The translations under genes and the position numbers were made by a program. Below the pieces are notes generated by a model. That model did not search any database. It was not told the DNA's origin and saw only the letters and a list, made by a program, of their open reading frames with translations. A DNA stretch of 53,823 bases from Leucoraja ocellata. Taxonomy: Eukaryota. Location: contig JAWMAR010001141.1 of the NCBI GenBank assembly GCA_036785375.1, positions 310,001 to 363,823 of the forward strand, in the 5' to 3' direction. Shown here piece after piece: positions 2,702 through 53,823 of this stretch (position 1 is its first letter; every line of letters begins with the position of its first letter).

Positions 2702-2737
2702 CTACGGCAAGCTGTGAGGTTTCGGTTCAATGGGTCC
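2702..2737 (-). CDS. Gene A exon 5, short cytoplasmic tail
   Basis: Poly-T-gcag acceptor, GPIEPKPHSLP*. Two of the three differences seen in B and C are synonymous in this frame. Confidence 0.7.
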   Translation of the reverse strand, partial: GPIEPKPHSLP

Positions 2738-5700
2738 CTGCAAAAAAAAAAATGTTGAAGACATCAGATAATTGACTCCGGGAATTTTGCTTTATTTCAC
2801 AAGGCCACTAACAACAGAATTCTGCTTCCAATTGGCCCAGTGACAGCATCCAAGAATTTGCTTGGATTTTGACTTTGATGCTATCTGTGTGGAGTTTGCA
2901 TGTTCTCGCTGTGTCCATGTGGGTTTCCTCCGCGAGCTCCGGTTTCCTCCGCGAGCTCCGGTTTCCTCCCACCTCCCAAAGACTTGTGGGTTTACTGGTT
3001 AATTGGCCAATGTGAATTTCCCCGAATGTGTTGGGAGTTGGGATGATAGAATGGGATAACATCGAACTAATGCGTACGGGTGATCAATGGCCTGATTGAC
3101 ACAAAGTGATGGAGTAACCCAGCGAGTCTGGCACGATCTCTGGAGAAAAAGGATGGGTGACATTTTAGGTCGGGACCCTTCTTCAAACTGAAAGTAGAGG
3201 GGAGGGAACTGCGTGTCTGGCGGACAGCGGCACCGGGAGCCCGCGGGTCCCTGGAGGGAGACCGCTTTTCAGGGCTCTCGCAACGGCGACTTCTCCCGCC
3301 TGAGTTGCGGGGTCGAAGAGCTCCTGGAGCGGCTTGGAATGGCCGCGGGACTCTGCGAGCGCACGCCGGGGGCTCCAACAACAGGACCCGGTGTGCGACC
3401 TTGCACCACCCGTCGTGGCTTTAATGGCCGCGGGACAATCGCCATCGCCAGCCGGGGGCTTTGACTTTGACTCTGACATCGGGGGGGGGGGGGGGGGGAG
3501 AGTGCAGTGGAGAGATAAGTTTTTTTGGCCTTCCATCACAGCGATGTGATGGATGTTTATGTAAATTATGTTGTGTCTTGGGTCTATTTGTTTGTAATAT
3601 ATGGCTGCAGAAACGGCATTTCGTTTGGACCTCAAGGGGTCCAAATGACAATTAAATTGAATCTTGAATCTTGAATCTTGGGGTTCAGGCAAGATGGTCT
3701 GCGTGGTCACAGTGGGTCAAAGGGCCTGTTTCCATGCTGTATTTCTCTGATTCAATGACACTACAACATCTACATCAAACACTTCAGTTCATTCTGAGCA
3801 CAAACATCTTGTCAAGACCAATTGATATCATCTATGTAGAGCATTGGTTTGGCCTATATTTGTGAAATACTTTATCTAAATGCTTTCCGTTTGTTTAATT
3901 TTATCAGCATGTTTGAAGATATTAATGGACATCATTTGGAAGCATTCAGCAATTCTGATGATCTCCGCAAAACATACCTTCCTTATACTTGTGAACAATG
4001 AGACTGAGATGCTGCAGATCCCAAGCAGAGCGAAGTACAGCCAGCGTCCCACATTCCATATCGTGTAACTGAGCAAAAGGGGAAAGATACAGAATCAGTG
4101 GGAGGAAACAGACTAGTTCGTGTTGGAAACATTCATATCCTGATTGCTGTGAAATATCTGCATGGAGCAGGGTACAGCAACAGAGCCCAGGGAGTTCAGC
4201 TGGGAAATTCCACCGTCCAGGATCTCAACCTGAAACATCACCGATCCATGTTCTTCAGAGATGCTGCCTGACTCGCTGAGTTACTCCAGCATTTTGTGTC
4301 TAGCGTTGATAAATTTAGATAAGAAAAGATGGGAGAAGTGACGAGTGGTATGTAAACACCAGCATGGGATCAGTTCAGTTGATCTTTTCTGTGCCTTAAA
4401 TCCTATGTGATCAGATGCAAGTCTGATTAAACAAAGTTGGAAGATCTCCAATGAGGTAGTTGGGAGGTCAGGATCGCTGGTGAGGGGATGATTCAGTTGC
4501 CTGATAACCGTTGGGAAGAAAATGTCCCTGACTCTGCAGGTGTGCGTTTTCAAACCTCAACTCTACCGCTGCACCACCATGCCACCCTCGACAACCTAGA
4601 GTTACTCCAGTACTTTGTGTTGTACTCAAGGTTCCAGCATCCAGCCAGGTTAATTCCCGGGATGGCGGGACTGTCATATGATGAAAGAATGGAGCGACTG
4701 GGCTTGTATTCACTGGAATTTAGAAGGATGAGAGGGTATCTTATAGACACATATAAAATTATTAAGGGATTGGGCACGTGAGATGCAGGAAACATGTTCC
4801 CGATGTTGGGGGAGTCCAGAACCAGGGGCCACATTTTAAGAATAAGGGGTTGGCCATTTAGAACTGAGACGAGGAAAACCTTTTCACCCAGAGAGGTGGA
4901 AATCTGTGGAATTCTTTGCCTCAGAAGGCAGTGCAGGCCGATTCACTGGATACATTCAAAAGAGAGTTAGATAGAGTTCTTAAAGCTAGCGGAATCAAGG
5001 GATATGGGGACTAGGCAGGAACGGGGTACTGATTGTGGATGGTCAACCATGATCACATTGAATGGCGGTGAATGGCCTACTCCTGCACTATTGTCGATCT
5101 ATCTATGTATCTATGTATGGATCAACAGTTCCTTGTGTCTCCACCTCTCATATTGAAAAGCTAGGCCAATCAAAACTTGAGCAAGTGAAAATTATACCTG
5201 TTAGAGAAACTGGTCGCATGATGATTGTTTTCGGATGTTACTTTTGTAGTTGAAGTAAATGCTACTGTTGTTGTTGTAGACGATTCAGTATTAGATTCAG
5301 GTTCTGTTGAGAAAAGGAAATAAAAGACAATTAAAGATAGACAAAATATGCTGGAGTAACTCAGCGGGACAGGCAGCATCTCTGGAGAGAAGGAATGGGT
5401 GAAGTTTACAATAGAAACATAGAAATTAGGTGCAGGAGTAGGCCATTCGGCCCTTGGAGACTGCACCGCCATTCAATATGATCATGGCTGATCATCCAAC
5501 TCAGTATCCCGTACCTGCCTTCTCTCCATACCCCCTGATCCCCTTAGCCACAAGGGCCACATCTAACTCCCTCTTAATATAGCCAATGAACTGGCCTCAA
5601 CTACCCTCTGTGGCAGAGAGTTCCAGAGATTCACCACTCTCTGTGTGAAAAAAGTTCTTCCCATCTCGGTTTTAAAGGATTTCCCCCTTATCCTTAAGCT

Positions 5701-8700
5701 GTGACCCCTTGTCCTGGACTTCCCTAACATCGGGAACAATCTTCCTGCATCTAGCCTGTCCAACCCCTTAAGAATTTTGTAAGTTTCTATAAGATCCCCT
5801 CTCAATCTCCTAAATTCTAGAGAGTATAAACCAAGTCTATCCAGTCTTTCTTCATTCGGGTCTGAGGACGGGTCTCGGGCCGAAACGTCACCCATTCCTT
5901 CCCTCCAGAGACGCTGCCTGTCCCGCTGAGATACTCCAACATTTCAAGTTCAAGTTCACATATTGTCACATGCACCAATTAAGGTACAGTGGTATTTGAG
6001 TTATCATACAGCCATACAAGTTTAAAAACATAATGCAATACACAATATTTTTAACATAAACATCCACCACAGTGGAATCATCATTCCTCACTGTGATGGA
6101 AGGCAACAAGGTTCACTCATCTTCCTCCTTTGTTTACCCGTGGTGGTCGGGGCCTTGAACCCTCAGCACTGCCACTGCCGACGGCCCGATGTTCAAGCCC
6201 TCTCGTCGGGATGATGGAGACTCCGGCGTCGGGGAGGAACGGAAACACTCCGCGGCTTCACGGTATTAAAGTCCACAAGCCCCGCGGTTGGAGAGCTTCC
6301 ACAGCGATTCTCAGCAAAGGATCACAGCTCCGCAATGTTAAAGTCCGCGTCGCCCTTGCGGCGAAGATCCAGCCCGGTCTCCAGGAAAGGCCGCATCCAT
6401 CCAGTTGTTAGTCCGCGGGGAGGGGACGGAGACGTGACACGGGGAAAGATCACATCTCTGTTGCGGTAAGTGACTGAAAACGGTTTCGCCCCCTCCCCTC
6501 CCCTCCCCTCACCCCCCACATTAAAAAACACAGAGAGACATTAAAACATACATTTTAGACAGACTGACAATAACAAAAAAGTCGAACTAACACACAGGCT
6601 GCTGGCGAGGCTGCCATCTCAGCGCCATCCAGTGACGCATCTATCTGCTCTATAGATTTTGTGTCTATGTTCGATTGAAACAGCATCTGCAGTTCTTTCC
6701 AACACAATAAAAGACATTTCCCTGTTTGCCGTTTCATCATTATTCAAGATCCAGGGGCATCATCTGCACACTCCCATGAGGGGTAAGAACAGAATTCGGC
6801 CAAACAGCAAAGATCCCGGCACTGATCCCTATGGTGCATCATTAAGGGCGGCACGGTGGCGCAGCTGTAGAATTACTGCCTTACAGCGCCAGGGACCCGG
6901 GTTCGATCATGACCACGGGTACTTGTCTGTCTGTCTGTCTGGAGTTTGTACATTCTCCCCCTGACCTGCGTGAGTTTTCTCTGAAAACTTCGGTTTCCCC
7001 CCACACTCCAAACACGTACAGGTTTACAGGTTAATTGGCTTGGTATAAATGTAAAACGTACCGTCAGATACTTGGAGCTGAACGTTAAACAATGGATCCA
7101 AGCCAGATGCATCAATTCCACAGCTGTACCATCCTGTATCGCTAGAGTGAAAATCCTCCACAGTCACAGTAAATTTTCCTTGTGCCGGGTTATCTGTGAT
7201 TGACGCTCTTCCACGTCTGTGTTGCCCATTTGTTTTCACTACAACTGAACACGAGCGAGTCCACCCATGACACCAGTATTTTGTGTGTGAACGGTACCGT
7301 GCTACATAGTAACAATCGATTGTGATATTTTTCCCCACAACTCCTCTTACAGGTGTATTTGCCGTCAGAGCACCTGAAACTGAGAAGAAAAATCATCAGA
7401 ACATGTACAGGACAAATCTACTTAACACAGCGTTTGTTGTCCCATCCACTCATCCCCTAATCAACGATGGGCCGAATGGTCCAACCCGTGTGTGGACATT
7501 CACTTACCCTTGAGCCAAGCACAAAGTGCCCGTGTAACTCAGCAGATCTGGCAGCATCTGTGGAGGGAATGGACACGTGACGTGTCGGGTTGGGACCCTG
7601 CTTCAGACTGATTAAAGTAGGGTGGGGAAAGCTGGAAGAGAGGTGGAGATGGGATAAAGCCTGGCAAGTGACAGGTGGAAGGTAGACACAAATTGCTGGA
7701 GTAACTCAGCGGGACAGGCAGCACAACAAGTGGATACAGATGAGGGGGGAATTTTGACTGGTTCACGAGTGGACAAAGACTGGAGGTGAAAAGCGGTGAA
7801 AAGGTTGTCAGATGAGGAGAGATGAGAAGCGAAATGTAAAGACAGAGGGAGGGGTATATTTGGTAGGGGACAGGGTGAAAGGGAGGAAGAGGCATGGGTT
7901 AAATGGTGCACAGGAAAGTGAGAGAGGGTAGGGGGATGTGCAATGTAAAATTGGAGAATTTAATGATCATAAGATATTTTTCTATTGATTGAATTGATTG
8001 AAAAATACAGCATGGAAAGGTGCCCTTTGGCCCATCGAGTCCTCTTCACACTAAAGATAGACACAAGGTGCTGGAGTAACTCAGCGGGTCAGGCAGCATG
8101 TCTGGAGAAATAGAATGCGTGATGTTTCGGGATTGGGACCCTTCTTCAGACACCCTTCTAAGTTACTCCAGCACTTTGTTTCTATCTTTGGTACAAACCA
8201 GCACCTGCAGTTCTTTGGTCCTAACTGTTTACACCAGTTGGGCAGCACAGTAGCACAGCAGAAGAGTGGCTGCCTTACAGCGCCAAGGACCCGGGTTTGA
8301 TCCTGACTATGGATGCTGAGACACTAGAGACAGGAAACATGTTCCCGATGTTGGGGGAGTCCAGAACCAGGGGCCACAGTTTAAGAATAAGGGGTAAGCC
8401 ATTTAGAACGGAGACAAGGAAACACAGAGAGTTGTGAGTATGTGGAATTCTCTGCCCATTCTCTGGAAACTTGCAAGAGAGAGCTAGATAGGGCTCTTAA
8501 AGATAATAGTTAGGGGATATGGGGAGAAGGCAGGAAAGGGGTACTGATTGGGGATGATCAAGCATGATCGCATTCAATAAACAATGGACAATAGACAATA
8601 GGTGCAGGAGTAGGGCATTTGGCCCTTCGAGCCAGCACCGCCATTCAATGTGATCATGGCTGATCATCTCCGTTCTAAATGGCTTACCCCTTATTCTTAA

Positions 8701-11092
8701 ACTGTAGCTCCTGGTTCTGGACTCCCCCAACATCGGAAACATGTTTCCTGCCTCTAGCGTGACCAAACCCTTAATAATCTTAAAATAATTTTACAATAAT
8801 CTTACATGGCAGTGCTAGCTCGAAGGGCCGAATGGCCTACTCCTGCACCTATTGTCTATTGATGAGTACTGAGGCTTGTGGATCCCTACAACAACCTTAT
8901 CCCCCAAATGCACGTATATCGTTGGCCTGTTTTATGGAGGGTAAACCTTATTTGCCATCATCCCCATCTATAAACAAGGAAATAGTCACCTACACTTCAC
9001 GCTGCCTTGCAAGGCCACCAGCATAATCATGGAGCAGTTTCATCTCAGTCACTCCTTCTTTACCTGTCTACCATTAGGCACGAGGAACAGAAGTTTGAAC
9101 CCAATGCTCTAGATTCAGAGACAGTTTTCTTACCAACTGTTATCAGGCAACTGACCCATCCTCTCAGTAGCTAGAGCGCAGTCCTGGCCTCCTATTTACC
9201 CCCTTGAACAATCAATAATTGGACTTCTTTGGACTAAACTAAACTAAACTAGTAAAGCAATGATACTAGATTACCGGAAATGATCTGGTGAATGAAGACA
9301 GTTAATGTTGGCCTTCACCTGCATCTGAGCATCAGTGATAACATTGAAAAAAAGAATTTACTTGGTAACAATAAATTATTAATATTGCATGCTGATGACT
9401 TTGACAAATATGCATAGTTGATGTCCAAGAACAAGAAGGAAATGGCTACATTGCAAGAGCAACCCACAGCCCAAGAGGAACTGGACGTCAAACAACATCT
9501 GAACTTTAAATAAGAGGAAGTGTTGTAAAATGGAGACAATTGTTTTGGCATTATTGCTTGGCTGCTGTTAGTGAGTGCAAGCAAGCAATAAAACAATGTT
9601 TCATGAATAGACAGGGTCCCTTTGCACTTTGACACCGTTACTTTAGTTTAGTTTAGTTTAAGATAGAGCATGGAAACTGGCCCTTTGGCCCAACGTGACC
9701 GTGCTGACCTAGTATCTTGTACACTAGGGACAATTTACATAGTCCTTATTCCCTATTTTTAGAGGCCAATTAACCTACAAATCTGTGCGTCTTTGGGATG
9801 TGGGAGGAAACCAGGGGACTGGGTAAAAAACCCATGCGGTCACAGGGTGAAAGTGCAAACTCCCTACAGACAGTCCCCTTAGTTAGGATTGAACCCAGGT
9901 CTCTGGTACTGTAAGGCACCGCTGTGCCACTGTCCCAGTCACTTGTAATTGTCTCTGTTTTTCATTCACAGTCGCTTTGTGCTGTCAGATACATTGGCGG
10001 CCATGATTTATGTGTGGCACAGTGATGGAGACAGGAGGAGATTGGAAGACCACACTCTAATATTGAGACAAAAGAGATTGCAGATGCTGGAATCTGGAAC
10101 AACAAACAGCACACTGAAAGGACTCAGTGGGTCATGGAGGTTTGAAGGCAAAAAAGTAAAGTGTAAGTTGTTCTTTCAGATCGAGACCCTGCATCAGGAC
10201 TGAGAGGAGACAGAGATGTTTGGCAACATATAGATGTACTAATGGGTGGGAGGGTTGGGGCTGGTTGAGGAAGATGGAACTGGATGAAGAGGATGTGTTT
10301 GATAGAGAATACACAAGCAGAACATGAGATGTTGATTGATAGTTCAAAACTCAATGGTACAAACATTACATTTTCCAATTTTGGGTAATTCACACCCTCT
10401 GGTGTTCTCCTCACACACAAGCCCACCTGCCGATCCTGATTCAACCTTTCCTGCCTCCCTTGCTCAGTCCCGATACAGGGTCCTCTTCACATTCACAGAT
10501 GCAGGCTGACCCACTGAGTTCCTCTTTCTTGATCCACGCCCCAATATTGTTCAGTTATCTTTACATCTGCAAGCATTTAACTATCTCCACTGCAGAAATG
10601 GTACACAAGACCCAGTTACATTCTGATCACCAAAATGAATATCAAAATAAAACTATGGCGGTTAACAAAATCTAACACGAAAACAAAAAAATAATCAGGT
10701 GGTCAGGGCGCATCTGTGGGGAGAGATAAAGTTAGGTTTTAGGTCGAAGGATCTCTGATCTGAAAGGGTAACTCTTTTTCTCGGCACACCTGCTAAGTAT
10801 TTCCAGCATATGTAAAGGAAGGAACTGCAGATGCTGGTTTACACCGAAGATAGACACAAAATGCTGGAGTAACTCAGAGGGACAGGCAGCATCTCTGGAT
10901 AGAAGGTATGGGTGACATTTCGGGTCGAGACTTTTCTTCAGCCTGTCCCGCTGAGTTACTCCAGCACGTTGTGACTATCTCATACTTCCCGTAGAGTCTG
11001 GTCACATGACCGTCCAAATCAAGCTGTTACTTACCGGGCAGGGAATAAATGAGCAGCATTGGAATCCACATAGTTTTATCCAAGGAGACCAT
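2702..11092 (-). CDS. CD300/pIgR-like (MDIR-like) single-V activating-type receptor, gene A (~202 aa, 5 exons)
   Basis: complement(join(2702..2737,3978..4068,5198..5303,7062..7379,11035..11092)) = 609 nt, open. All introns GT-AG, phases 1,1,2,0. Leader MVSLDKTMWIPMLLIYSLP, V domain, S/T stalk, TM SYTIWNVGRWLYFALLGICSISVSLF, tail GPIEPKPHSLP*. Confidence 0.88.
3211..3680 (+). mobile_element. Unit-A-specific retroposon insertion with a (ttgaatc)n tail
   Basis: Absent in B (gggaact|gggttcag) and C. GC-rich body, poly-G tract and tandem 3' tail. Confidence 0.75.
3978..4068 (-). CDS. Gene A exon 4, transmembrane with Arg
   Basis: YTIWNVGRWLYFALLGICSISVSLFTSIRK. Acceptor ttttgctcag|, donor AAG|gtatgt. 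Confidence 0.88.
4645..5115 (+). mobile_element. CR1 LINE 3' fragment
   Basis: RLIPGMAGLSYDERMERLGLYSLEFRRMRG. Copies near 16480-16965 and 29025-29505. Confidence 0.88.
5198..5303 (-). CDS. Gene A exon 3, Ser/Thr-rich stalk
   Basis: EPESNTESSTTTTVAFTSTTKVTSENNHHATSFSN. Acceptor ttctcaacag|, donor AG|gtataa, phase 1 to 2. Confidence 0.85.
5410..5854 (-). mobile_element. CR1 LINE 3' fragment, inverted relative to 4645-5115
   Basis: ERLDRLGLYSLEFRRLRGDLIETYKIL..RVVNLWNSLPQ. Copies near 17252-17700 and 29800-30248. Confidence 0.88.
5858..5893 (+). ncRNA. Minimal type I hammerhead ribozyme-like motif in a Penelope-derived repeat (copies 17703-17738, 30251-30286)
   Basis: GGGU-CUGAGGA-stem II-GAAACGUC-ACCC. 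Stem I GGGU/ACCC is perfect, stem III is the palindrome ACGU, and stem II is degenerate in this copy. Confidence 0.5.
5945..6630 (-). mobile_element. Non-autonomous retroposon with a (ttgaac)n tail
   Basis: CpG-rich body, variable poly-C tract and tandem tail. Present in all three units. Family not identified. Confidence 0.5.
6846..7045 (+). mobile_element. tRNA-derived V-SINE next to the V-exon donor
   Basis: A box TGGCGCAG, B box GGTTCGATC and V-domain core tggagtttgtacattctcccc. Confidence 0.8.
7062..7379 (-). CDS. Gene A exon 2, V-type Ig domain (CD300/TREM/pIgR type)
   Basis: ITIDC..KYWC..C..DTGWYSC with the extra C-C' Cys pair. Acceptor ttctcag|, donor G|gtacgt, 318 nt. Confidence 0.95.
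9473..9522 (+). promoter_or_regulatory. Candidate intronic PU.1 sites
   Basis: AAGAGGAACT at 9473 and near-consensus AAGAGGAAGTG at 9512-9522. The second site is kept in all units, the first is deleted in C. Confidence 0.3.
11035..11092 (-). CDS. Gene A exon 1, signal peptide
   Basis: ATG at 11092 (alternative 11071), hydrophobic MWIPMLLIYSLP, phase-1 donor G|gtaagt. Confidence 0.85.
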
Positions 11093-11160
11093 GTTAGCAC
11101 TGACCTGCTGATCAGTTCTTAGTCCTCAGACTGAACGGTCTGACAAATATGGCATGTATT

Positions 11161-11202: not shown

Positions 11203-11261
11203 AGAATGAGACATGATAAAATCTGAAACTTTAGAATTTGAAGTTGTCTCAGTTAAATTTA

Positions 11262-43598: not shown

Positions 43599-46500
43599 CT
43601 AAAATGTAACACAATCCAATTTTACAACCTAATAGATTTGAAAGGTCCTCAACAGAGGTCTATTACAAAGTAGGTCTCAAACTGTTCAGTGTATAGAACA
43701 AGCCATTGCTGCTGTTTACAACACAAAGATAGTGCAGTACGGTGGAGCAGCAGTAGAGTTGCTGCCTGACAGCGCCTACAACAGGCTTGTGGGCTAATTG
43801 GTTTGGCATAATTGCAAATTGCCCCTAGTGTGTGTAGGATACTGTACATGTGCAGGGTTCGTTAGTCGGCCTAGACTCTGTGGGCCAAAGGGCCTGTTTC
43901 TGCGCTGGATCTCTTAACTGGACTGGACTGGTGTTGCTAAACGACCTGTGTAAACACTGATAATTCAATGCTATATATTCTTCATCACTCAGAGAATTTA
44001 TATTTCACATTTTTACCTGGGTTTCATTGTTGTCTTCACCGTGTGATGTATTGCGCTTGGATTCTGGAAAATATGTTGTCGATAGAGCCATATCAGGAAC
44101 AGGTTTAAACATCATTCATTCATATATTCCATTCATTTGTTCTATGTATCTTCGAGATCTCTTGTTTCCCTTTCCCCTGACTCTCAGTCTGAAGAAGGGT
44201 CTCGACTCGAAACGTCACCTGTTCCTCTTCTGCATAGACGCACCCTGACCCGCTGAATTGCTTGAACATTTTGTGTTTATCTTCATTGTAAACCAGCATC
44301 TGTAGTTCCCTCCAACACACAGAAACATCTACGTGTTGTGTGCAAGACCTTATATTTAGGTCAAAAGTACTGCACGTACGGAATAAGAATCAGCCCTGTT
44401 GTTCTGGTTGCTGTATCATATTCCCTGTGCTCTACCCATCCCTCCTAACAGATGCCTAAACCTACCCGATCTCCCGGTTGCTCAACACTTTAACTCCTCC
44501 CCCCATTCCCACACTAACCTTTCTGTCCTGGGCCTCCTCCGTTGTCAGAGTGAAGCCCAGCACCAATTGGAGGAACAGGACCTCATATTTTGCTTGGGCA
44601 GCTTACACCCCAGCGGTATGAACATTGACTTCTCTAACTTCAAGTAACCCTTGTTTTTCCCTCTCTCTCCATCCCCTCCCCATTCCCAGTTCTTTGACTA
44701 GTCTTACTGCCTCCGACTACATTTTATCTCTGTACTACCAACTCCCCTGACATCAGTCTGAAAAGGGGTCTTGACCCGAAATGTCACACATTCCTTCTCT
44801 CCAGAGATGCTGCACGTTCCACTCAGTTACTCCAGCATTTTGTGTCTATTGTCCTAACCTTATCTGCTAAAACAGGTTTCATAAGTTCAGTAAGTGATAG
44901 GAGCAGAATTATGCTAATCGGCCCATCCATCTACCATCATCGGTGGTGAAGATAGTTGGCAGCTTCAAGTTCATGGGCGTTCACATCTTGGATTACCTGT
45001 CCAAGCTAGACCAGCTCTGCCTCAACTACCTCCTCTGGCAGCTCCTGCCATATACCCACCACCCTCTGTGTGATGCAGGTATGTTGTACGTTGTCGATGT
45101 CCATGTGAGGCTGCAGGCGTGATCTTCATTGTAACTGTACTTCACCATGCTTGTGCATGTGACAATAAACACGACTTCACCTGAATCGAAATACAACAGC
45201 TAATCACACAAAGCATATTCTAACAGCTGAGAGGATGTGAGTATCTATGTAAATCTTACTTCTACCTGGCCTCTTAGTTCTCACACATCTCTGCCATTTC
45301 ACACTCAAGACAGTTTCTGTACAATGATGTTCAAAGAACAATTTTTCACTGAGTCACCATGAAAGCATCAAACATGATAGCATTATTGATCATTCATGCT
45401 TCCCCCCACATTTTATTACTTTAATGCAGGGCATTTGTTGATTAGAACATAATTAAATCTCTTGACATTCTGCAAGGGACTGAGACATGTATTGTGAAAT
45501 TATTTAAGGGAAATCAGAAACTCACCCTTGGTTTTACGCTTTCGGTACCAAAAGAAGGCAATGATGAGAATCAGGAGAAGCACAGTGACACCAGACGCAA
45601 CTATGTAAATGATCCTGTTGGACAGAGAATAGGGAAGGGTGAGACGTGGCTCATCATTGATTCTTGGACTTCAGTAAAGAACAAAAGTCAAGCATTTATA
45701 TGGCACCTTTCATGATTTTTTTGAAGTGTGCAGCAAAGGAAATGAGGTGTAGAGTTTGTTTCGGTGGGTAATGCAGCAGCTAATCTGCTCACAGTAAGGT
45801 GACACTGACAAACGATCGTGAAACTGGTTGAAGAGCAAATGCGTCCAACCATTAAGGAACCCTCCCTCCTCCTTGACAAACAATGTATGGAAACTGTTAC
45901 ACTTTTATTGCAGTGATTAGTTGAGTTGAGTTTCGATTAGATTAGTTGAGTTTAGAGATACAGCATGGAAACAGGCCTTTCGGCCCACCAAGTCTGCATC
46001 GGTCAGCAATCCCCATACACTAGATCTGTCCTAAACATCGGAGACAATTTACTGAAGCCAATTAACCTACAAACCTGCACGTCTTTGGAATGTGGGAGAA
46101 AACTGGAACACCCAGAGAAAACTGGAGCCAACCCCTGTGGTCACTGAAAGAACGAACAAACTCCGTACAGGCAGCATCCGTTGTCAGGATCGAACACGTC
46201 TCTGGGGCAATAAGGCAGAAACTCTACCACTGTGCCTCCATGCCACTGTTTTTGGAGTTTTCATATCTGACTGCCAGCATGCTGCCCCCCCCCCCCCCCC
46301 CCCCCCCCCACCCCCTCAATACTGCAGTGTCTTAACCAAATATTTGCAGCTATCATTGAAACCACCACTGTGTGAATACAGTTCTACAACCTTGTTCCAA
46401 CCTCGGTGGAGAGAACACCAGGCCAATGAGAAAACAATGCACTTGGTTCCCAACAAATCTCACCACAATGCCATTTACAACTCCATCTTCACCTCCACCA

Positions 46501-49500
46501 ACATTGGGTTTGGACAGTGACTGTTCGCTAAGAGCTGTCTGGAATATGAAACATCTTCAACATATCCAGAAGACGGCTCACCATGACCATCTCAAGGTCA
46601 GCAGTGTGATCTAACGTGCCTACCATCCCAGGGTCACGTTCTAGGTGGAGACACTTCCTGCTGTTGGAGTGACTGACATTGAGACTTTGACCAACTCTGC
46701 AAGGTGTTGCCATACGTGATATCAAAGGTAGTGTTTTAGCCCATAATTCACTATGCATTTTCCTATCAGTACCACGCCAGAGCAGGTCACAGCAAGGCAA
46801 AGCAACTATACTTGGGTTTGGCAACTATACTCATCTCACACCATGGGATGAGGTTAGTGATGGAGAAGTCATGGTGAATACCGCAGGGAGTACAGGTACC
46901 ACAAATGGAGGAAGTGTTCTTATCACCCAAGCATATACACAACACAATGAGATGCAAACCAGCGCAATTTCACTATTGGTGAGTTAACTAATATCTGGTT
47001 TGCAAGTCATATACATATTATGATAGAATAAGGTCATAAGCAATATGAGAAGAATTAGGGAATTTGGCCTATCACATCTACTCCGCCATTCAATCATGAC
47101 TGATCTATCTCTCCCTCCAAACTCCATTGTCCTGCCTTCTCCTCATAACCTCTAACACCCGTACTAATGAAGAATCTAGCTATCTCTGCCTTAAAAATAT
47201 CCACTGATTAGCCTCCACAGAATTCTGAGGCAAATAATTCCACAGATTCACCCTCAAACTAAAGGATTTTCTCCTCATCTTCTTCCTAAAAGAACATCTC
47301 ATTCTGAGGCTGTGACCTCTGGTCCTAGAATCTCCCACTGGTGGAAACATCCTCCCCACATCCACTCTATACAAGCCTTTCACTATCACGTATGTTTGAG
47401 GTCCCCTATACCTCCCTGGTTATCTCATCTTTTCCCATCCAATAGCTCTCCCCAATTCCTTCCCTTTCTACCACAGAAAACGCAACACCTGTCCCCGTAC
47501 CTCCTCCCTCGACTCTGTCCAAGGACCTCAACTGTCCTTTCAGGATAGAGTTCATTTGAACCTCATCCAACCTCATCTACTGTATGAGGTGTGGACTCTT
47601 ATACATCAGCAGGACCAAACGTTGACTGGGCGATCGTTTCACTGAACACCTATGCTCAGTCCTCCTGGCACTATATGATCTCCCAGTTGCTAAACACTTT
47701 AACTCCCCCGCCCATTCCCAAACTGACTGTTCTGTCCTGGGCTTCCTCCATTGCCAGAGTGAGGCCATATGCAAATTGGAGGACCAGCACCTCATACTTC
47801 TCTTGGGCAGCTTACTGCCAAAGCAGTATAAATGTTGATTTCTCTAACTTTAAATTACCCTTGCATCTCCTCTCTCTTCGTCCTTCCCCCACTCTAGTTG
47901 TGGTATGAATGTCACTGTTGTCTTGTAGTGTCTCATTGTCTGTATAACTCGTTTTCACCTAACCCACAGCTACCTATGGATCGTTTCCTTGATCATCGTT
48001 ACTTTTTTGCATATCTTTCATTCATTGTTTTATATCTTTCTATATCACCGTCGATATCGCTCTCGTTTCCCTTTCCCCTGACTCTCACTCTGAAGAAGGG
48101 TCTCAACCCGAAACGTCACCTATTCCATTTCTCCAGAGACGCTGTCTGACCCGATGAGTTACTCCAGTTGTTTGTAGCTATATTCAGTTTAAACCAGCAT
48201 CTGCAGTTCCTTCCAACACAATGAAAGCAAAATATGCAGAACACACATAGACGGCACCTAAGTTCAGGGTCTTGGCTTTGTGAGGCTGTGGTTCCACTGG
48301 CTGTGTCACTGTGTGTACAGATCAATACTCCAACTGGCCTTGAATGTCAGTGAACGGAAGACACAAACTTCTCCCAATTGAAGCAATCCCAATCAAAACA
48401 CCAGCAATTAGTACATGGCGCCTTTCATTGGAAACAGAGTAGTTAACCTTGAAGGTAGACAAAAGTGCTGGTGAAACTCAGCGGGTGCAGCAGCATCTAT
48501 GGAGCGAAAGAAATAGGCAACGTTTTGGGCCGAAACCGTTCATCAAGCCCTCCATCAGTCTGAAGAAGGGTTTCGGCCCGAAACGTTGTCTATGTCCTTC
48601 GCTCCATAGATGCTGCTGCACCCGCTGAGTTTGTCCAGCACTTTTGTCTACCTTCGATTTTCCACCATCTGCAGTTCATTCTTAAACAGTTTACCTTGAA
48701 GTATACTTGGATCTTTTTGAAGTTTCACAAGAATATTCAAGTCCTGTTGGAACAAGGAAATAAAAAATCAGTTTCACTGCTTTTCACTTGCAGTTGAACA
48801 AGAGAGCATGCTTGTCCGATGTAAGGAGTTTATAGGCTTAATAGACAGGGCAATGATCCCGACCACGGGTGCTGCCTGTATGGAGTTTGTACGTTCTCCC
48901 CGTGACCTGCGTGGGTTCTCTCCGAGATCTTCGGTTTCCTCCCACACCCCAAAGACGTACAGGTTTGTAGGTTAATTGCCTTTGGTTAATATCCCTAGTG
49001 GGTGTAGGATGGTTAATAATGTGCGGGGATCGCTGGTCGGCCCAGACCCGGTGGGCTGAAGGGCTTGTTTAGGCACTGTACCTCTAAACTAAAGACGTGC
49101 AGGTTTGTAGGTTAATTGGCTTCTGTAAATTGTCCCTTAATTTAGAATTGTCCCTAATTGTAGAATGGGTGTACCGGTGAAAGGCAGCTGCTTCCACGCT
49201 GGATCTTTAAACTAAACTGGCTGGATAGCTGGGGTTTTATTCCACACAGGAGAGGAACCAGGAAGCTAATACAGGTGTGCCTGTAATGTCGCTATGAGGG
49301 ACATAGATAAGGTACTTCGTGGGAAATCAGCACAGCAGATGTGCATAGACGTGGAGAACATAGCGTTGAGTTTAGGAGTAGAATATTTGGAGGGTGTCTG
49401 AGCAAGAAATATTATTAAACCTAGATGGTGAAGGCACTTGAATTGTCAAGTCTGAGAAGACTATGGGTGAGGAGCTGGTAAAAATTGGATAAGTATCGAT

Positions 49501-52423
49501 GGTACTTAATGGTAACACAGTGGACCAAATCTGATAGAGTCTAGAAGTTAACTGTGGTCACATTTACTGATAATTTCTGTTCCCTTCCCATATTTGAGTG
49601 TCGGTCATGTGGAGATGATGGAAAGTGAAAGTGCTTGGACTGATGTCACTACAGACCTAATTTAAAGCAGTGTAAACATAAGAGGAAGTTCTAGCCGGGA
49701 AGCTGGTCTACACCAGCACTGGGAAATCTATTTCTGGAGCCCAGCAACCAAGTATTGACAAATGGGCCACAATTCCATCATTTTAATCTTGATAAGAATT
49801 AAATAACGTGCATGGATTTCAGGGTGTCGGGGGTTATGTGGAGAAGGCAGGAGAATGGGGTGAAGAGGGGAAGATAGATCAGCCATGATTGAATGGTCTA
49901 TTTCTGCTTCTATCACATGTGATCTTATGAACCACCCCACCCGCACTTCCCCTTCTTCTCCCCATTCCCTCCACTACTTACCAGTTCCGTTGATTTTCAC
50001 TGGGAAACTGCAGGGCACGTCACTGCTTGAGATGGACACGTTGACCATTTCACTGGATTTTGATCCACGTTTATTTGAGGCTGTGCAATAATATTGATGG
50101 TGCTGGTGTTTGAAGGATTGACAATGTAGATCCAGGGCATTGTTGTCTGAGATCTTTGAATCCACAGATGGGGTCTTTTCATACCAGGTGTAGTTAATGG
50201 GAAGGGATCCCCGGAACGACTCGCAGGACACTGTCACTGAGCCCCCGAGACAGGAGACATTGGCTGGTGACAGAAATCCAAGTACAGGAACAGACACGGG
50301 TTCTGTGGGAAAGGAGCAAACAGTCAGACACTGAGTCAACATCTGAAAATGAAACACTCGCCAATATCCAACATCTCTGTATCATAGCCAGAGCCGCCAG
50401 TTTGGAATCTGACCCATCCATCTACATATAACCATAGTCATGCAGCGTAGAAACAGTTCCTTCTGTCTAACTTGCCCGCACTGACCAACACGCCCAATCT
50501 ACACTAGTTCCACCTGCCCATGCTTGGCCCTTAACCCTCCAAACTAATCCTATTCATGTACCTGTTCAAAATTTTCTTGAATGTTATGATAGTACCTGCA
50601 ATAACTGCTTCCGTCAGCAGTTCGTTTCATATACCTACCAACCTTGTGTAAAAACGTTACTCCCCAGATTCTTGTTAAATCATTCTCCTCATCTTAAAAC
50701 TATGTCCTCTGGTTCTCGATTCCCCTACTCTGGGCAACAGACTCTGTGCATTTACTCGACCTATTCGTTGCATGATTTTTTTTTTACCTGCCTGAAGATC
50801 ATCCCTCATCCTCCTGCGCTCCAAAAAGTAAAGTGCTAGACTGCTCAACTCCTCCCTCTGGGTCGGGTCCTCAAGTCATTCTAAGTCTTCTCTGCACCCT
50901 ATCCAACTTGTCAGCATCTTTCCGATAACATGGTGGTTAAAACTGACCACAAATCAGACAAATCATCAGACAATCTTAGATTCTCTTTATTTCAGGAATT
51001 ACCAGCAGGAAAACATATAAGATAGAAAATAGGTGCAGGAGTAGGCCATTCAGCCCCTCGAGCCTGCACCGCCATTCAATATGATCATGGCTGAATATCC
51101 AACTCAGTATCCTGTACCTGCCTTCTCTCCATACCCCCTGATACATATAGCCACAAGGGCCACATCTAACTCCCTCTTAAATAGAGCCAATGAACTGGCC
51201 TCAACTACTTTCTGTGGCAGAGAGTTCCAGAGATTCACCACTCTCTGTGTGAAAAATGTTTTTCTCATCTCGGTCCTAAAAAACTTCCCCCATATCCTTG
51301 CATATGGATAACTATGAAAAGGGAGCATCGTTTATGCAACAGTGTTGGCTATTCAAAGCAACAAGGAAGCTGCCCATTTGTCGAATCAAAATCAAACTGT
51401 TGCAGAAATGCAATTTCATAGGAAATCGACAGGGACACATTCCAGCACAGATGAGGACAATGTCAGCTACTCAGATATTACATTTCAAAGCAACAGCCAA
51501 ATTGTCCTTCAGAAAGATCCATCGACTCACAATCCATTTACCAGATTTATACATCTCTGTGTCTCTCCATTCTCTCAGCTGCCAGAACCACCATGTCTGC
51601 CACTGGACCAGTACACAGCAGCACCATCTCTCTTTGTTTTACAATTCCTACAATCTACAGTTAATCTTTTAATCTAAAACTCTGCCACAATTCTACAATA
51701 CCAAGATTCAAACACTTCATCAGTGCAACAGTATCACTCTCAGCAACTTTTTTAATTTGCTTGTATAAAATTGTTGATGGTGATACTGTTGCACTAATGA
51801 TGTGTGTGAATGGCGGTATTGTAGAATTGTGTGTAGGGAGCGAATGGGAAAGTGGAACAACATAGAACTAGTGTGACCGGTGATCGCTAGTCGGTGTGGA
51901 CACGGTGGGCCGAAGGATCCGTTTCCATGTTGCATTTGTAAACTACAACTAAATATCCCAGTGACATTTTCTGTAACCTCTCCAAACCTTCCACATCTTT
52001 TGTTTTATAAAGCGGGGACCAGAACTGTGCACCAGACTCCCACCTAACAAATGTTTTATGCGGATGCCAAAGTGGAGACATAAAGTCCCTCATTGAGAAA
52101 CCTACCTTCAGATACTTGGAGATATACTTTAAATGTTGGTTCGCCAGGTGCAGTAATTCCACATCTGTACCATCCTGTATCTCCAGAGTGAAGATCCTCC
52201 ACAGTCACAGTAAATATTCCTCGTGCCGGGTTATCTGTGATTGACACTCTTCCGCTCTGTCCATGTTTCCCATTTGTTTCCACTACATGTGTACACTGGC
52301 GACTTGTCTCACGGCACCAGTATTTTGTGTGTGAGCGGTACACTGCTGCATAGTGACAATCGATTGTGATCGCTCTTCCCACAACCCCTCTTACTTCGCT
52401 CTCAGCCCACAGTGCACCTGAAA
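43332..52423 (-). CDS. CD300/pIgR-like (MDIR-like) inhibitory receptor, gene D (V-C2-TM-ITIMs), 5' end not in view
   Basis: complement(join(43332..43598,44017..44063,45260..45316,45526..45614,48695..48743,49982..50302,52106..52423)) is open with GT-AG introns and matching phases. Tail motifs ITYAVV, VVYADV, STYASV. Confidence 0.88.
44017..44063 (-). CDS. Gene D cytoplasmic exon 2
   Basis: SKRNTSHGEDNNETQ. Acceptor ttttccag|, donor CAG|gtaaaa, phase 1 to 0. Confidence 0.78.
44455..44850 (+). mobile_element. Penelope-like element 3' fragment
   Basis: LPVAQHFNSSPHSHTNLSVLGLL..GSLHPSGMNIDFSNFK plus the terminal repeat. Confidence 0.82.
45260..45316 (-). CDS. Gene D cytoplasmic exon 1 (symmetrical, could be skipped)
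   Basis: ETVLSVKWQRCVRTKRPGR. Acceptor ttgtacag|, donor A|gtaaga (alternative end 45266), phase 1-1. Confidence 0.6.
45526..45614 (-). CDS. Gene D transmembrane exon (uncharged)
   Basis: IIYIVASGVTVLLLILIIAFFW followed by YRKRKTK stop-transfer, donor G|gtgagt. Confidence 0.92.
47040..47388 (-). mobile_element. CR1 3' fragment
   Basis: GDSRTRGHSLR..RVNLWNYLPQ. Confidence 0.75.
47530..48220 (+). mobile_element. Degenerate Penelope-like element with a recognisable GIY-YIG domain
   Basis: SSNLIYCMRCGLLYISRTKR*LGDRFTEHL, HFNSP region, and hammerhead-like motif at ~48086-48122. Confidence 0.82.
48455..48687. mobile_element. Palindromic Penelope terminal-repeat insertion at the gene D linker-exon donor
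   Basis: ~90 bp inverted arms (48451-48541 and 48565-48655), flanked by agtt(a/t)accttgaag at 48441 and 48688. Confidence 0.8.
48695..48743 (-). CDS. Gene D linker exon
   Basis: GLEYSCETSKRSKYTS. Acceptor ttgttccaacag|, donor AG|gtaaac. Its 49 nt exactly bridge phase 1 to phase 2. Confidence 0.8.
49982..50302 (-). CDS. Gene D C2-type (FcR-like) Ig domain exon
   Basis: EPVSVPVL..GGSVTVSCESFRGSLPINYTWY..YYCTASN, 321 nt, phase 1-1, donor G|gtaagt. Confidence 0.93.
50996..51570 (+). pseudogene. Inverted relic of an ITIM-bearing terminal exon, split by CR1 and frameshifted
   Basis: Acceptor ttctctttatttcag|GAA at 50996. After the CR1 it reads HMDNYE/GSIVYATV..TVAEMQFHRK..NVSYSDI../DLYISV, which aligns with gene D HLDNNEGGITYAVV..VVYADVKFHRN..STYASV. 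Confidence 0.7.
51013..51298 (-). mobile_element. CR1 3' end interrupting the inverted ITIM pseudo-exon
   Basis: KTFFTQRVVNLWNSLPQKVVEASSLALFKRELD. Confidence 0.85.
52106..52423 (-). CDS. Gene D V-type Ig domain exon
   Basis: VSGALWAESEVRGVVGRAITIDCHY..KYWCRETSRQC..DTGWYRC. Acceptor ccttcag|, donor G|gtagg. Confidence 0.95.
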
Positions 52424-53089: not shown

Positions 53090-53713
53090 GCCTTGGCTGC
53101 GCTTGGTCTCGCTGTTGTAAACCATTCACACTCTATTCTGGACTTCCAATCTGAGCGTCTCCACACCTACCGGGGGTTTCATTTCAAAATGATTTTTGAC
53201 AAAGGTAAGAGTTATACTTGATGGAGTGACGGCCAAGTAGATTCCACTTTAATTTTGTGAGATTACTGGAGTTCATGTGATTCACACAAATTAACAGAGT
53301 GAAAAATATGAACATGATGATGAAATTGTACATCCTTGGTTATAAATGATGATGGATCCACATAGAATGCATTTGATTGCTTTCGATGTCTCAAAGTGAA
53401 TGTGAGATCTTAAACTGTAGCCAGAAAATCATTTTTAGCAGACATTTGGTGGAATGCTCTCGACCCGTTGAGATAAGTGCCGGTCTCTCTCTCCTTTCGA
53501 AGCTCAACACCTCCCAGGTGAAAGCAATAGGCAACTGTTTGCCAGTCCCCCAAACAAACTCGCACATTTTACACCATGAGCTCACGGTGGCTGCAATGAT
53601 GCCGCCTGCAAATACCTAGAAACCCACGACCATCACCACAAGGTGAAAAGCAGCAGCTACAAGAACACGAGAGGAATTGTGAAACTGTATTCCCATGGGA
53701 AAATAACACTCAC

Positions 53714-53823
53714 CTGTATTGTTCATTTCTGTCACATAACTGCACGTGGCTGCTCCTTTGAAGACTTTCACATTGAGTATTTCACTGTATTTTATCCCAC
53801 GAGTATTTGAGGCTGTGCAGTAA
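53714..53823 (-). CDS. Partial C2-type Ig exon (3' end), upstream module of gene D or of a neighbouring paralog
   Basis: YCTASNTRGIKYSEILNVKVFKGAATCSYVTEMNNT then G|gtgagt. Homologous to the end of the 49982-50302 exon. Confidence 0.88.

What the first reader, a model, noticed from the sequence alone, without database searches (positions are those of the whole stretch)
2702..53823. Paired activating/inhibitory CD300-like receptor cluster in a probable cartilaginous fish
Seen: three intact single-V receptors with a charged TM and no signalling tail lie in tandem with a receptor whose closely related V domain is joined to a neutral TM and ITYAVV/VVYADV/STYASV motifs. Known: this is the architecture of paired-receptor systems such as KIR, Ly49, LILR/PIR and CD300, and skate MDIRs combine CD300/TREM/pIgR-like V domains with FcR-like C2 domains. 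Inference: an innate paired-receptor system whose activating arm recently tripled, possibly to counter pathogen ligands aimed at the inhibitory member. The ORF track does not show these spliced models.
Basis: partly seen in the sequence, partly recalled or inferred. Interest (0 to 1): 0.85.

Follow-up and report, generated by a model that had tools for sequence, protein, structure and literature searches.

The report
Skate activating and inhibitory Ig-receptor cluster
This stretch of a skate-like genome holds three tandem copies of a small activating-type immune receptor gene next to the tail end of a large inhibitory relative, an ordinary piece of a receptor family already known from skates, sharks and rays.

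Summary
The sequence features are real. On the minus strand lie three tandem units of about 12.5 kb that differ by 3.1-3.4% in substitutions. Each unit carries an intact five-exon gene: leader, CD300/pIgR-type V domain, Ser/Thr stalk, transmembrane exon with an N-V-G-R arginine, and an 11-residue tail. All 30 splice sites are canonical and the phases fit.

Gene D has the neutral transmembrane exon and a last exon with ITYAVV, VVYADV and STYASV. It is not a single-V gene. Its exons run (partial C2 at the window edge)-V-C2-stalk-TM-cyt-ITIM tail, collinear with an 809-aa (V-C2)x3 RefSeq model from Rhinoraja. Its 5' end lies outside the window.

D's V domain is only 66-69% identical to those of A-C and sits in a separate, well-supported clade. 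The strict "paired" reading is therefore not supported. A-C V exons show excess amino-acid change: 17 replacement and 0 silent differences between A and B.

The family matches skate MDIRs and the "CMRF35-like"/"pIgR-like" models annotated across chondrichthyans, so this is a new member of a known kind. RNA support is indirect. Unchecked first-reader notes of this scan describe similar clusters elsewhere in this genome.

The parts
1..37465 (-). Three tandem repeat units (1-12339, 12340-24882, 24883-37465), each holding one activating-type gene. The array may continue before base 1.
   Evidence: Self-BLAST gives 92.7-96.5% identity. MAFFT of the three units gives pairwise substitution differences of 3.10%, 3.39% and 3.28%.
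11035..11092 (-). Gene A leader exon (19 codons plus 1 base; donor gtaagt)
   Evidence: tblastn: 19 of 19 residues identical to the leader of Leucoraja erinacea CMRF35-like molecule 1, P0004. Borders checked.
7062..7379 (-). Gene A V exon (318 nt, phase 1 to 1)
   Evidence: Pfam V-set E 8.9e-9. DNA read, borders. Model pLDDT 80.9, best fold match CD300lf with TM 0.82.
5198..5303 (-). Gene A Ser/Thr-rich stalk exon (106 nt, phase 1 to 2)
   Evidence: DNA read. Matches the stalks of P0006 and P0004 and of the P0007 single-V part (E 3.2e-9).
3978..4068 (-). Gene A TM exon with arginine (Y-T-I-W-N-V-G-R-W...; 91 nt, phase 2 to 0)
   Evidence: DNA read. Charged-TM family HMM E 4.6e-19.
2702..2737 (-). 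Gene A tail exon (11 residues plus TAG). AATAAA lies about 83 nt downstream.
   Evidence: DNA read, borders. The tail matches P0006 and P0062.
23577..23634 (-). Gene B leader exon
18930..19247 (-). Gene B V exon
   Evidence: Pfam V-set E 4.3e-7; borders
17047..17149 (-). Gene B stalk exon (103 nt)
15812..15902 (-). Gene B TM exon (N-V-G-R-W)
   Evidence: Charged-TM HMM E 1.6e-20. 31 of 31 residues identical to the transcript-derived P0006.
15000..15035 (-). Gene B tail exon plus stop
36307..36364 (-). Gene C leader exon
31929..32249 (-). Gene C V exon (321 nt, one extra codon)
   Evidence: Pfam V-set E 1.6e-7
29590..29695 (-). Gene C stalk exon
28357..28447 (-). Gene C TM exon (N-V-G-R-W)
   Evidence: Charged-TM HMM E 1.6e-20
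27545..27580 (-). Gene C tail exon plus stop
   Evidence: 11 of 12 aligned residues match P0006, and the 11 tail residues are identical.
53714..53823 (-). 3' part of a C2 exon cut by the window end. Its donor is G|gtgagt in phase 1, so it can splice into D's V exon.
   Evidence: C2 HMM E 7.6e-11, profile positions 71-105. DNA. The same C2-to-V junction stands in P0009, P0010 and P0029.
52106..52423 (-). Gene D V exon (318 nt, phase 1 to 1)
   Evidence: Pfam V-set E 4.8e-14. DNA, borders. 98/105 identical to P0029, 94/105 to P0010, 92/105 to P0009.
49982..50302 (-). Gene D C2 exon (321 nt, phase 1 to 1)
   Evidence: DNA, borders. Best PDB sequence match is FCRL5, E 1e-47. Pfam Ig_3 and Ig_2 fall just below their cut-offs.
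48695..48743 (-). Gene D membrane-proximal stalk exon (49 nt, phase 1 to 2)
   Evidence: DNA, borders. 12/15 identical to P0007 and P0029; 10/10 in a local match to P0009.
45526..45614 (-). Gene D neutral TM exon (89 nt, phase 2 to 1)
   Evidence: DNA, borders. E 3.9e-8 against the P0009 tail. One 182-nt run contig matches 45526-45613 and diverges at both ends, with 8 of 88 letters different (X1 record 4).
44017..44063 (-). Gene D small cytoplasmic exon (47 nt, phase 1 to 0)
   Evidence: DNA and borders. 12/15 identical to P0009.
43332..43598 (-). Gene D last exon with ITYAVV, VVYADV and STYASV, then the stop
   Evidence: DNA. BLASTP to P0009: 57/91 identical, E 9e-34.
51318..51674 (+). Inverted orphan ITIM-tail fragment inside D's V-C2 intron. 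It is homologous to the tail of the single-V inhibitory receptor type.
   Evidence: BLASTP to P0007 residues 784-857: 50/74 identical, E 6e-27. phmmer E 1.9e-23. No V, C2 or TM exon was found on the + strand.

Best explanation
The window is a piece of a large chondrichthyan multigene family of modular Ig receptors. The family has CD300/pIgR-type V domains and FCRL-type C2 domains. It was described in skate as MDIRs, and RefSeq names its members 'CMRF35-like' or 'polymeric immunoglobulin receptor-like'.

The window holds at least three tandem paralogues (A, B, C) of a single-V receptor. Its transmembrane arginine (N-V-G-R) and 11-residue tail leave it no signalling motif of its own. It would therefore have to signal through an ITAM adaptor, either FcR-gamma-like or DAP12-like (inferred).

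The window also holds the 3' two-thirds of a multi-domain (V-C2)n receptor, gene D. D has a neutral TM and a tail with three ITIM-type tyrosines. Once phosphorylated, these would recruit SHP-1/2-type phosphatases and damp activation (inferred).

A, B and C arose by tandem duplication of a unit of about 12.5 kb. Since then their V exons have gained amino-acid changes faster than the surrounding DNA gained substitutions, which points to diversifying selection on ligand binding.

D is a neighbour from another branch of the family. It is not the inhibitory twin of A-C.
For: Gene structure:
- All 15 exons of A-C are open, have canonical splice sites and fit in phase.
- All 6 complete D exons and the partial edge exon are likewise canonical and in phase.

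Transcript-level support for the A-C architecture:
- P0006 is a 191-aa protein called on a 1028-nt Logan contig. That is too short to be unspliced, because V to tail spans 4.7 kb here.
- It reads V-stalk-TM-tail. Its TM exon is 31/31 identical to B and C, and its tail equals that of C.

D model:
- V, C2, stalk, TM, cyt1 and the last exon align collinearly to P0009 (XP_078277138.1, Rhinoraja longicauda, 809 aa). The alignment starts are at residues 445, 551, 658, 674, 704 and 719.

Domain types:
- V: best PDB sequence matches are pIgR, CD300f and CD300a. The best fold match is CD300lf, TM 0.82.
- C2: best match is FCRL5, E 1e-47.

Family size and spread:
- 2767 representative proteins match at E<=0.001.
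- Named members come from skates, rays, sawfish, sharks and a chimaera.

Selection on the V exons of A-C:
- A versus B: 17 replacement and 0 silent differences.
- dN/dS is 1.74 for A-C and 1.54 for B-C.
- Replacement counts exceed the unit-wide substitution rate, with Poisson P of 1.9e-3, 5e-8 and 1e-6.

TM motif:
- NxxR at the outer end of the TM is the motif of FcR-gamma-associating receptors (passages of PMC2413239 and PMC6557307).

MDIR description:
- Skate MDIRs are described as multigenic activating/inhibitory receptors resembling CD300, TREM, FCAR and pIgR (passages of PMC3031540).
Against: - There is no direct RNA evidence for these four genes. The four runs laid were contigs, probably largely DNA, and covered almost only repeats. 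The D last exon had zero depth.
- P0009 and the other XP_ proteins are automatic models, and some are plainly chimeric: P0029 is fused to a TRIM gene, and P0007 runs into the next gene.
- D's 5' end and leader are outside the window, so its integrity cannot be judged.
- The N of N-V-G-R is not conserved in the other charged-TM homologues, which have K, S or T there in 8 of 10 family sequences. The FcR-gamma reading therefore rests on a weak motif.
- Gene conversion from other paralogues could mimic part of the dN excess. Silent differences between C and A/B run at about twice the background rate.
- Adaptor pairing and phosphatase recruitment are untested.
Confidence: 0.82

Rival explanations
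1. Strict paired-receptor system. D is the inhibitory partner whose V domain gave rise to A-C, and the tripled activating arm counters pathogens that exploit D.
For: - Both receptor types lie within 16 kb in the same orientation.
- The V exons of D and A share 80% DNA identity over 344 nt.
- dN/dS is above 1 among A-C.
- The closest solved fold, CD300lf, is itself used as a receptor by a virus, according to the entry titles.
Against: - D and A-C fall in different starred clades in the tree.
- Protein identity is only 66-69%, and dS is about 0.2 between D and A-C against 0-0.07 within A-C.
- No intron homology exists between D and the A unit apart from repeats.
- D's ectodomain has at least C2-V-C2, against a single V in A-C.
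- A closer inhibitory type exists: P0007 residues about 586-870, with an A-C-like V and stalk.
Confidence: 0.1
2. A, B and C are young duplicates that are silent or on the way to becoming pseudogenes. The amino-acid changes would then reflect relaxed constraint, not selection.
For: - No reads were shown for these copies (one search did not cover them).
- No database protein above 86% identity to any of them was found.
- dN/dS near or above 1 can arise when constraint is lost.
Against: - There is no stop, frameshift or broken splice site in any of 15 exons.
- TM, tail and leader exons are nearly unchanged while the V exon changes.
- The replacement rate in V (7.0-11.6%) exceeds the neutral-like 3.1-3.4% of the unit, which relaxation alone cannot produce.
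- A transcript of the same build exists (P0006).
Confidence: 0.08
3. The D exons belong to two transcription units. One would be an ectodomain gene (V-C2-stalk) that once ended in a charged TM. The other would be a separate TM-ITIM remnant. Alternatively, D as a whole is a truncated pseudogene.
For: - The closest V (P0029, 98/105 identical) is modelled with a charged TM.
- tblastn gave a faint TM-like match at 48280-48459, right after the stalk exon (E 0.65-1.1).
- D's 5' end is not in the window.
Against: - The charged-TM family HMM does not find that stretch at all at E<=30, while it finds A, B and C at E<=5e-19. Its would-be splice sites are AA and GC.
- The stalk-TM-cyt1-tail phases fit and are collinear with P0009.
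- A run contig ends within one base of the predicted TM exon borders.
Confidence: 0.06

Closest known systems
Skate MDIRs (modular domain immune-type receptors; Cannon et al. 2006, Immunogenetics 58:362). I know this paper only through passages and the reference list of PMC3031540.
   Same: - The host is a skate-like cartilaginous fish.
- It is a multigene family with activating and inhibitory forms.
- The domains resemble CD300/TREM/pIgR and Fc receptors, and are combined in a modular way (V alone, V-C2, repeated V-C2).
   Different: - No direct sequence comparison with MDIR1-5 was possible, because the paper and sequences are not held.
- The genomic layout given here comes from this window: a 12.5-kb tandem triplication next to a (V-C2)n gene. 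I could not check it against the paper.
Mammalian CD300 (CMRF35-like) family
   Same: - A single V-type Ig domain with the extra cysteine pair.
- The best solved fold is CD300lf (TM 0.82, 37-39% identity).
- The cluster mixes ITIM-bearing members with charged-TM, short-tail members.
   Different: - The activating members here have an arginine at the outer end of the TM in an N-x-x-R setting. From my own recall, not tested, mammalian activating CD300 members have a mid-membrane lysine or glutamate.
- The inhibitory neighbour has added FCRL-like C2 domains.
- Orthology and synteny were not testable.
Polymeric Ig receptor (pIgR) and RefSeq 'pIgR-like' models of elasmobranchs (e.g. XP_078277138.1, Rhinoraja longicauda)
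   Same: - Repeated CD300/pIgR-type V domains.
- D's exons are collinear with the C-terminal 365 residues of that model, with V 92/105 and the tail 57/91 identical.
   Different: - True pIgR has five V-like domains, no interleaved C2 domains and no ITIM tail (recalled, apart from the domain matches).
- The RefSeq name is automatic.
NxxR-TM receptors that dock FcR-gamma (LILRA, PIR-A, OSCAR, FcalphaR, NKp46, GPVI; Xenopus FcR-like XFL). Source: passages of PMC2413239 and PMC6557307.
   Same: - N-x-x-R at the N-terminal end of the TM, with a Y-T just before it in gene A.
- A short tail.
- The motif is used in a strongly expanded, diversifying family.
   Different: - The ectodomain is CD300/pIgR-like, not LRC- or FcR-like.
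- The asparagine is replaced by K, S or T in the other charged-TM homologues.
- Association with any adaptor is untested.

Membership tests
MDIR (skate modular domain immune-type receptors) | Found in cartilaginous fish as a multigene family | tested here: met
   All named close homologues are chondrichthyan. 132 representatives match at E<=1e-30.
MDIR (skate modular domain immune-type receptors) | Ig domains resembling CD300/TREM/pIgR, combined with Fc-receptor-like domains | tested here: met
   V: pIgR, CD300f, CD300a and TREM2 by sequence and by fold. C2: FCRL5, E 1e-47.
MDIR (skate modular domain immune-type receptors) | Both activating (charged TM) and inhibitory (ITIM) forms occur | tested here: met
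   A-C TM arginine and short tail. D neutral TM and three (S/I/V/L)xYxx(I/V/L) motifs.
MDIR (skate modular domain immune-type receptors) | Sequence relationship to the published MDIR1-5 proteins | not testable with these tools
   PMC3701310 and PMC2823954 are not held. No protein named MDIR came back from any search.
CD300 / CMRF35-like | Single V-type Ig ectodomain of the CD300 fold with a second cysteine pair | tested here: met
   A-C have one V exon. C22, C36, C43 and C86 are invariant or nearly so. Fold match to CD300lf, TM 0.82.
CD300 / CMRF35-like | Orthology or synteny with the mammalian CD300 locus | not testable with these tools
Paired receptors in the strict sense (KIR, Ly49, CD300A/C style) | Activating and inhibitory genes lie adjacent in one cluster | tested here: met
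   D's last exon lies 7 kb upstream of gene C's leader, on the same strand.
Paired receptors in the strict sense (KIR, Ly49, CD300A/C style) | Ectodomains of the two partners are each other's closest relatives | tested here: not met
   66-69% protein identity. Separate starred clades. Different domain numbers.
Paired receptors in the strict sense (KIR, Ly49, CD300A/C style) | The partners share a ligand | not testable with these tools
   Needs binding experiments.
NxxR-TM, FcR-gamma-docking receptors | N-x-x-R at the N-terminal end of the TM | tested here: inconclusive
   Present in A, B and C and in 2 of 10 family homologues (P0006, P0062). The other 8 have K, S or T in place of N.
NxxR-TM, FcR-gamma-docking receptors | Physical association with FcR-gamma | not testable with these tools
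   Needs co-expression and co-precipitation.

The most novel reading that the evidence does not exclude
The window may catch an activating-only array in the making. In this reading an ancestral single-V inhibitory gene stood next to the D-type gene. Such a gene follows the D-like exons in the Rhinoraja fusion model P0007 (V, the same stalk, a neutral TM, ITIMs). Here its place is taken by single-V genes that carry a charged-TM exon and a short tail instead. One leftover ITIM exon was inverted into D's intron (51318-51674). The new activating gene was then amplified at least threefold and its V domain driven apart by selection. That would be a dated, exon-level example of how an activating 'counter-receptor' arm is born from an inhibitory gene in a basal jawed vertebrate.
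Probability: 0.15. Interest if true: 0.55.

Novelty: new member of a known kind. Interest (0 to 1): 0.33.

Why it matters
The window gives an exon-level genomic picture of a modular activating/inhibitory Ig-receptor family in a cartilaginous fish. It shows exact splice phases that allow V and C2 exons to be shuffled, since every Ig exon is phase 1 to 1. It also shows a young tandem amplification of the activating form and a clear excess of amino-acid change in its V domain.

This is useful for annotating such clusters, which automatic pipelines mis-join. Two of the closest RefSeq models are gene fusions. It is also useful for choosing genes for ligand and adaptor tests.

It does not change the known picture. 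Paired or mixed activating/inhibitory Ig families with rapid V-domain evolution are expected in all jawed vertebrates, and this family was described in skate in 2006.

Tried and rejected
1. A decayed charged-TM exon in gene D at about 48280-48459, suggested by tblastn (E 0.65-1.1). I rejected it. An HMM of 10 charged-TM family segments finds A, B and C at E 1.6e-20 to 4.6e-19 but does not list that stretch at E<=30 among 2706 six-frame segments. Its would-be splice sites are not AG/GT.

2. A decayed V exon at 38505-38621. The V HMM gives E 2.3, which is not significant.

3. RNA evidence. The look-up of sequencing runs gave 13 runs, none on record as RNA.
- Read laying of X1, X2, X3 and X5 on 43300-49299 at 90% likeness laid 22,315-34,720 contigs per run, almost all on repeats.
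- Depth over 43300-43699 (D's last exon) was 0.
- The listed joints are between repeat copies.
- One 182-nt contig fits the TM exon.

4. Searches for near-identical database proteins.
- The A V ORF gave 5 hits among 7 candidates, the best at 78-80% identity.
- The D V ORF gave 6 hits among 25 candidates.
- D's last exon had no candidate in the 48-154 aa length range, which says nothing about longer proteins.

5. Literature. Searches for MDIR, skate and immune-type receptor, for 'modular domain immune-type receptor', for CD300, cartilaginous fish and paired receptors, for CMRF35-like with shark, skate or elasmobranch, and for MDIR, CD300 and zebrafish gave only PMC3031540 as a source on MDIRs. 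The primary MDIR paper and a review by the same group are not held. I found no paper on the genomic organisation of this family in skates, but subscription journals are not covered.

6. Species assignment. It is not resolved beyond 'a skate, or a close relative of Leucoraja, Amblyraja or Rhinoraja'.

7. Joined models. The spliced proteins were never assembled, printed or searched. All searches and translations were done exon by exon, and split codons were worked out by hand from the phases.


Full report
**What is in the sequence.** The window has no N runs. Its first 37.5 kb is a tandem repeat: three units of about 12.5 kb align at 92.7-96.5% identity. Over 11,360-12,059 aligned columns they differ by 3.10% (A-B), 3.39% (A-C) and 3.28% (B-C) in substitutions. 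The repeat reaches base 1 of the window, so three copies is a minimum. All receptor exons lie on the minus strand. Pfam finds a V-set domain in four ORFs at 7.0-7.4, 18.9-19.2, 31.9-32.2 and 52.1-52.5 kb (E 8.9e-9 to 4.8e-14). It also finds a C2-like Ig ORF at 50.0-50.4 kb, just under the Ig_3 and Ig_2 cut-offs. A family HMM search of all 2706 six-frame segments found exactly four V exons, one complete C2 exon and the last third of a second C2 exon cut by the window end (53822-53619 segment, E 7.6e-11). Nothing else was significant.

**Genes A, B and C.** I mapped the exons with batoid homologues by tblastn and read the borders in the DNA. Each gene has five exons:
- a leader of 19 codons plus 1 base;
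- a V exon of 318 or 321 nt;
- a Ser/Thr-rich stalk of 103 or 106 nt;
- a TM exon of 91 nt;
- a tail of 11 codons plus the stop.

Every acceptor is AG and every donor is GT. The phases are 0-1, 1-1, 1-2, 2-0 and 0-stop, and the coding lengths add to 202, 201 and 203 codons. I worked this out exon by exon and never assembled or searched a joined protein. The TM exon reads Y-(T/M)-I-W-N-V-G-R-W followed by a hydrophobic run. The tail has no tyrosine. An AATAAA follows the stop of gene A by about 83 nt.

The architecture has transcript-level support from P0006. This 191-aa protein was called on a 1028-nt Logan contig, which is far shorter than the 4.7 kb that V to tail spans here. It reads V, stalk, TM and tail in that order. 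Its TM exon is 31/31 identical to B and C, and its 11 tail residues equal those of C. Its V domain is only 77-81% identical, so it comes from a paralogue or a related species, not from these copies.

**Gene D.** Its last exon (43598-43332) holds ITYAVV, VVYADV and STYASV. All three fit (S/I/V/L)xYxx(I/V/L). The neutral TM exon is 45614-45526. The TM exon ends in phase 1 and the last exon starts in phase 0, so an exon must lie between them. A 47-nt exon at 44063-44017 has canonical sites and restores the frame. Upstream lie a 49-nt stalk exon (48743-48695), the C2 exon (50302-49982) and the V exon (52423-52106), all canonical and in phase.

These six exons align in order to P0009, the 809-aa RefSeq model XP_078277138.1 of Rhinoraja longicauda:

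| Exon | Identity to P0009 | Start in P0009 |
|---|---|---|
| V | 92/105 | 445 |
| C2 | 89/105 | 551 |
| stalk | 10/10 (local) | 658 |
| TM | 20/28 | 674 |
| small cytoplasmic | 12/15 | 704 |
| last | 57/91 | 719 |

P0009 reads leader, then (V-C2) three times, then stalk, TM and an ITIM tail. The partial C2 exon at the window edge ends G|gtgagt in phase 1. The resulting C2-to-V junction is the one seen in P0009, P0010 (Leucoraja erinacea) and P0029. No leader-like exon lies between it and D's V exon. D is therefore the 3' part of a multi-domain inhibitory-type receptor whose start lies beyond base 53823.

**RNA.** The one reads call went to 43300-49299, which covers D's stalk through its last exon. 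None of the 13 runs offered is on record as RNA. The four runs laid are contigs, and they covered repeats almost exclusively. D's last exon had no depth. One 182-nt contig of run X1 matches 45526-45613, within one base of the predicted TM exon. It has 8 of 88 letters different and non-matching sequence on both sides, as a spliced transcript of a paralogue or relative would. This is a hint that the exon borders are real.

**Relationship of the V domains.** D's V exon is 80% identical in DNA to that of A over 344 nt, and nothing else in the D region matches the A unit except repeats. Protein identity is 66-69% between D and A-C, against 77-86% among A, B and C.

I built a maximum-likelihood tree of 63 V domains. 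These were the four from the window plus 59 domains scoring 95 bits or more, taken from the stored homologues.
- A, B and C fall in a starred clade (98/89) with P0004, P0006 and P0062. P0006 and P0062 have the arginine TM, and P0004 is a truncated model.
- D falls in a different starred clade (98/98) with P0029, P0010 and the internal V domains of P0007 and P0009.
- The alignment has only 106 columns, many deeper forks are open and the bootstrap had not fully settled. The two clades named here are nevertheless well supported.

**A better inhibitory counterpart.** The C-terminal 285 residues of the Rhinoraja model P0007 come from a neighbouring gene run together with a D-like gene. They read an A-C-like V, an A-C-like stalk (E 3.2e-9 to the gene A stalk segment), a neutral TM and an ITIM tail. 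In this window that tail type is present only as a plus-strand fragment at 51318-51674, inside D's V-C2 intron. The fragment is 50/74 identical to P0007 (E 6e-27) and still shows SIVYATV and VSYSDI. It has lost one tyrosine through a one-residue gap and its end has diverged. No other plus-strand receptor exon was found.

**Selection.** Counts for the V exons of A-C by the Nei-Gojobori method:

| Pair | Replacement differences | Silent differences | dN/dS |
|---|---|---|---|
| A-B | 17 | 0 | not defined |
| A-C | 28 | 5 | 1.74 |
| B-C | 25 | 5 | 1.54 |

- Against the unit-wide substitution rate, the replacement counts are 2.3 to 3.4 times the expectation, with Poisson P of 1.9e-3, 5e-8 and 1e-6.
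- The chance that all 17 A-B differences are replacements is 0.011.
- The 300 columns just upstream of the V exon differ by only 0.7% between A and B.
- On a predicted model (pLDDT 80.9) the variable sites lie in the N-terminal strand, the B-C loop (4 sites), the D-E region (5 sites), the E-F turn and scattered elsewhere. No ligand site is known, so I draw no structural conclusion.
- Against D, dN/dS is about 1.0.
- Gene conversion from other paralogues is not excluded.

**What it is like.**
- By sequence the V domain is closest to pIgR domains, CD300f/CLM-1 (E 1.4e-19), CD300a, then TIM, NKp44 and TREM2.
- By fold it is closest to CD300lf (TM 0.82, 37-39% identity), pIgR D1, CD300a, CD300c and TREM2.
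- The C2 domain is closest to FCRL5 (E 1e-47 over six domains).
- The family is large: 2767 representatives match at E<=0.001 and 132 at E<=1e-30.
- Its named members come from skates (Leucoraja, Amblyraja, Rhinoraja), rays (Hemitrygon, Hypanus, Mobula, Narcine), a sawfish, sharks (Scyliorhinus, Chiloscyllium, Mustelus, Heptranchias) and a chimaera.
- They carry automatic names such as CMRF35-like molecule, polymeric immunoglobulin receptor-like, Fc receptor-like 5 and CXADR-like.
[quoted passage not shown] 2006 (reference list). I could not read that paper or compare its sequences.
- Passages of PMC2413239 and PMC6557307 define the NxxR motif at the outer end of the TM as typical of FcR-gamma-associating receptors, preceded by a DYT consensus, and show FcR-gamma association for Xenopus FcR-like receptors.
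- A-C have N-V-G-R, and gene A has Y-T before it. However, 8 of the 10 family TM segments have K, S or T instead of N.

**How it most likely works.**
- Shown: the gene structures, domain types, motifs, duplication and substitution pattern.
- Inferred for A, B and C: they sit in the membrane with a buried arginine that pairs with the acidic residue of an ITAM adaptor, and they signal activation when the V domain binds its ligand.
- Inferred for D: after tyrosine phosphorylation of its three motifs it recruits SH2 phosphatases and inhibits.
- Inferred for the duplicated V domains: they are being selected for different or escaping ligands.

**Verdict.** The thing is a new member of a known family. 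First-reader notes of this scan describe similar clusters on other pieces of this genome and in the adjoining window. Those notes are unchecked and are used here only as leads. No supplementary files were needed or seen.

Noticed in passing
window 51318-51674 (+): An open 119-codon segment on the opposite strand, inside D's V-C2 intron. It is 50/74 identical to the ITIM tail of the single-V inhibitory part of Rhinoraja model P0007. It keeps SIVYATV and VSYSDI but has no V, stalk or TM exon on its strand. It looks like an inverted leftover of another receptor gene.
   Followed up: partly
window 53714-53823 (-): The last third of a C2 exon is cut by the window end. Its donor is in phase to splice into D's V exon, so D continues upstream of the window.
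   Followed up: partly
proteins P0007 and P0029 (RefSeq models of Rhinoraja longicauda): Two of the closest database models are gene fusions. P0029 joins a TRIM69-like N-terminus to C2-V-C2-TM. P0007 runs from a D-like TM exon straight into the V exon of the next receptor gene. Automatic annotation of this cluster type is unreliable.
   Followed up: no
window 5563-5895, 17345-17740, 29893-30288, 40565-41236 (all -), and others: Retroelement-derived ORFs recur in every unit and between genes C and D. They include a reverse-transcriptase-like 223-aa ORF at 40565-41236 and repeated fragments of about 110-130 aa. These repeats dominated the laid contigs.
   Followed up: no
window 45526-45613 (-): A single 182-nt contig of run X1 matches within one base of the predicted neutral TM exon at 91% identity and diverges on both sides. 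It is the only non-repeat record laid on the D region.
   Followed up: no
window 9656-9955 and 94-692: Patches where one unit differs from the other two by 6-10% against a 3% background. Unit B stands out at 9656-9955 and unit A at 94-692. This could be local gene conversion or insertions of diverged repeats.
   Followed up: no
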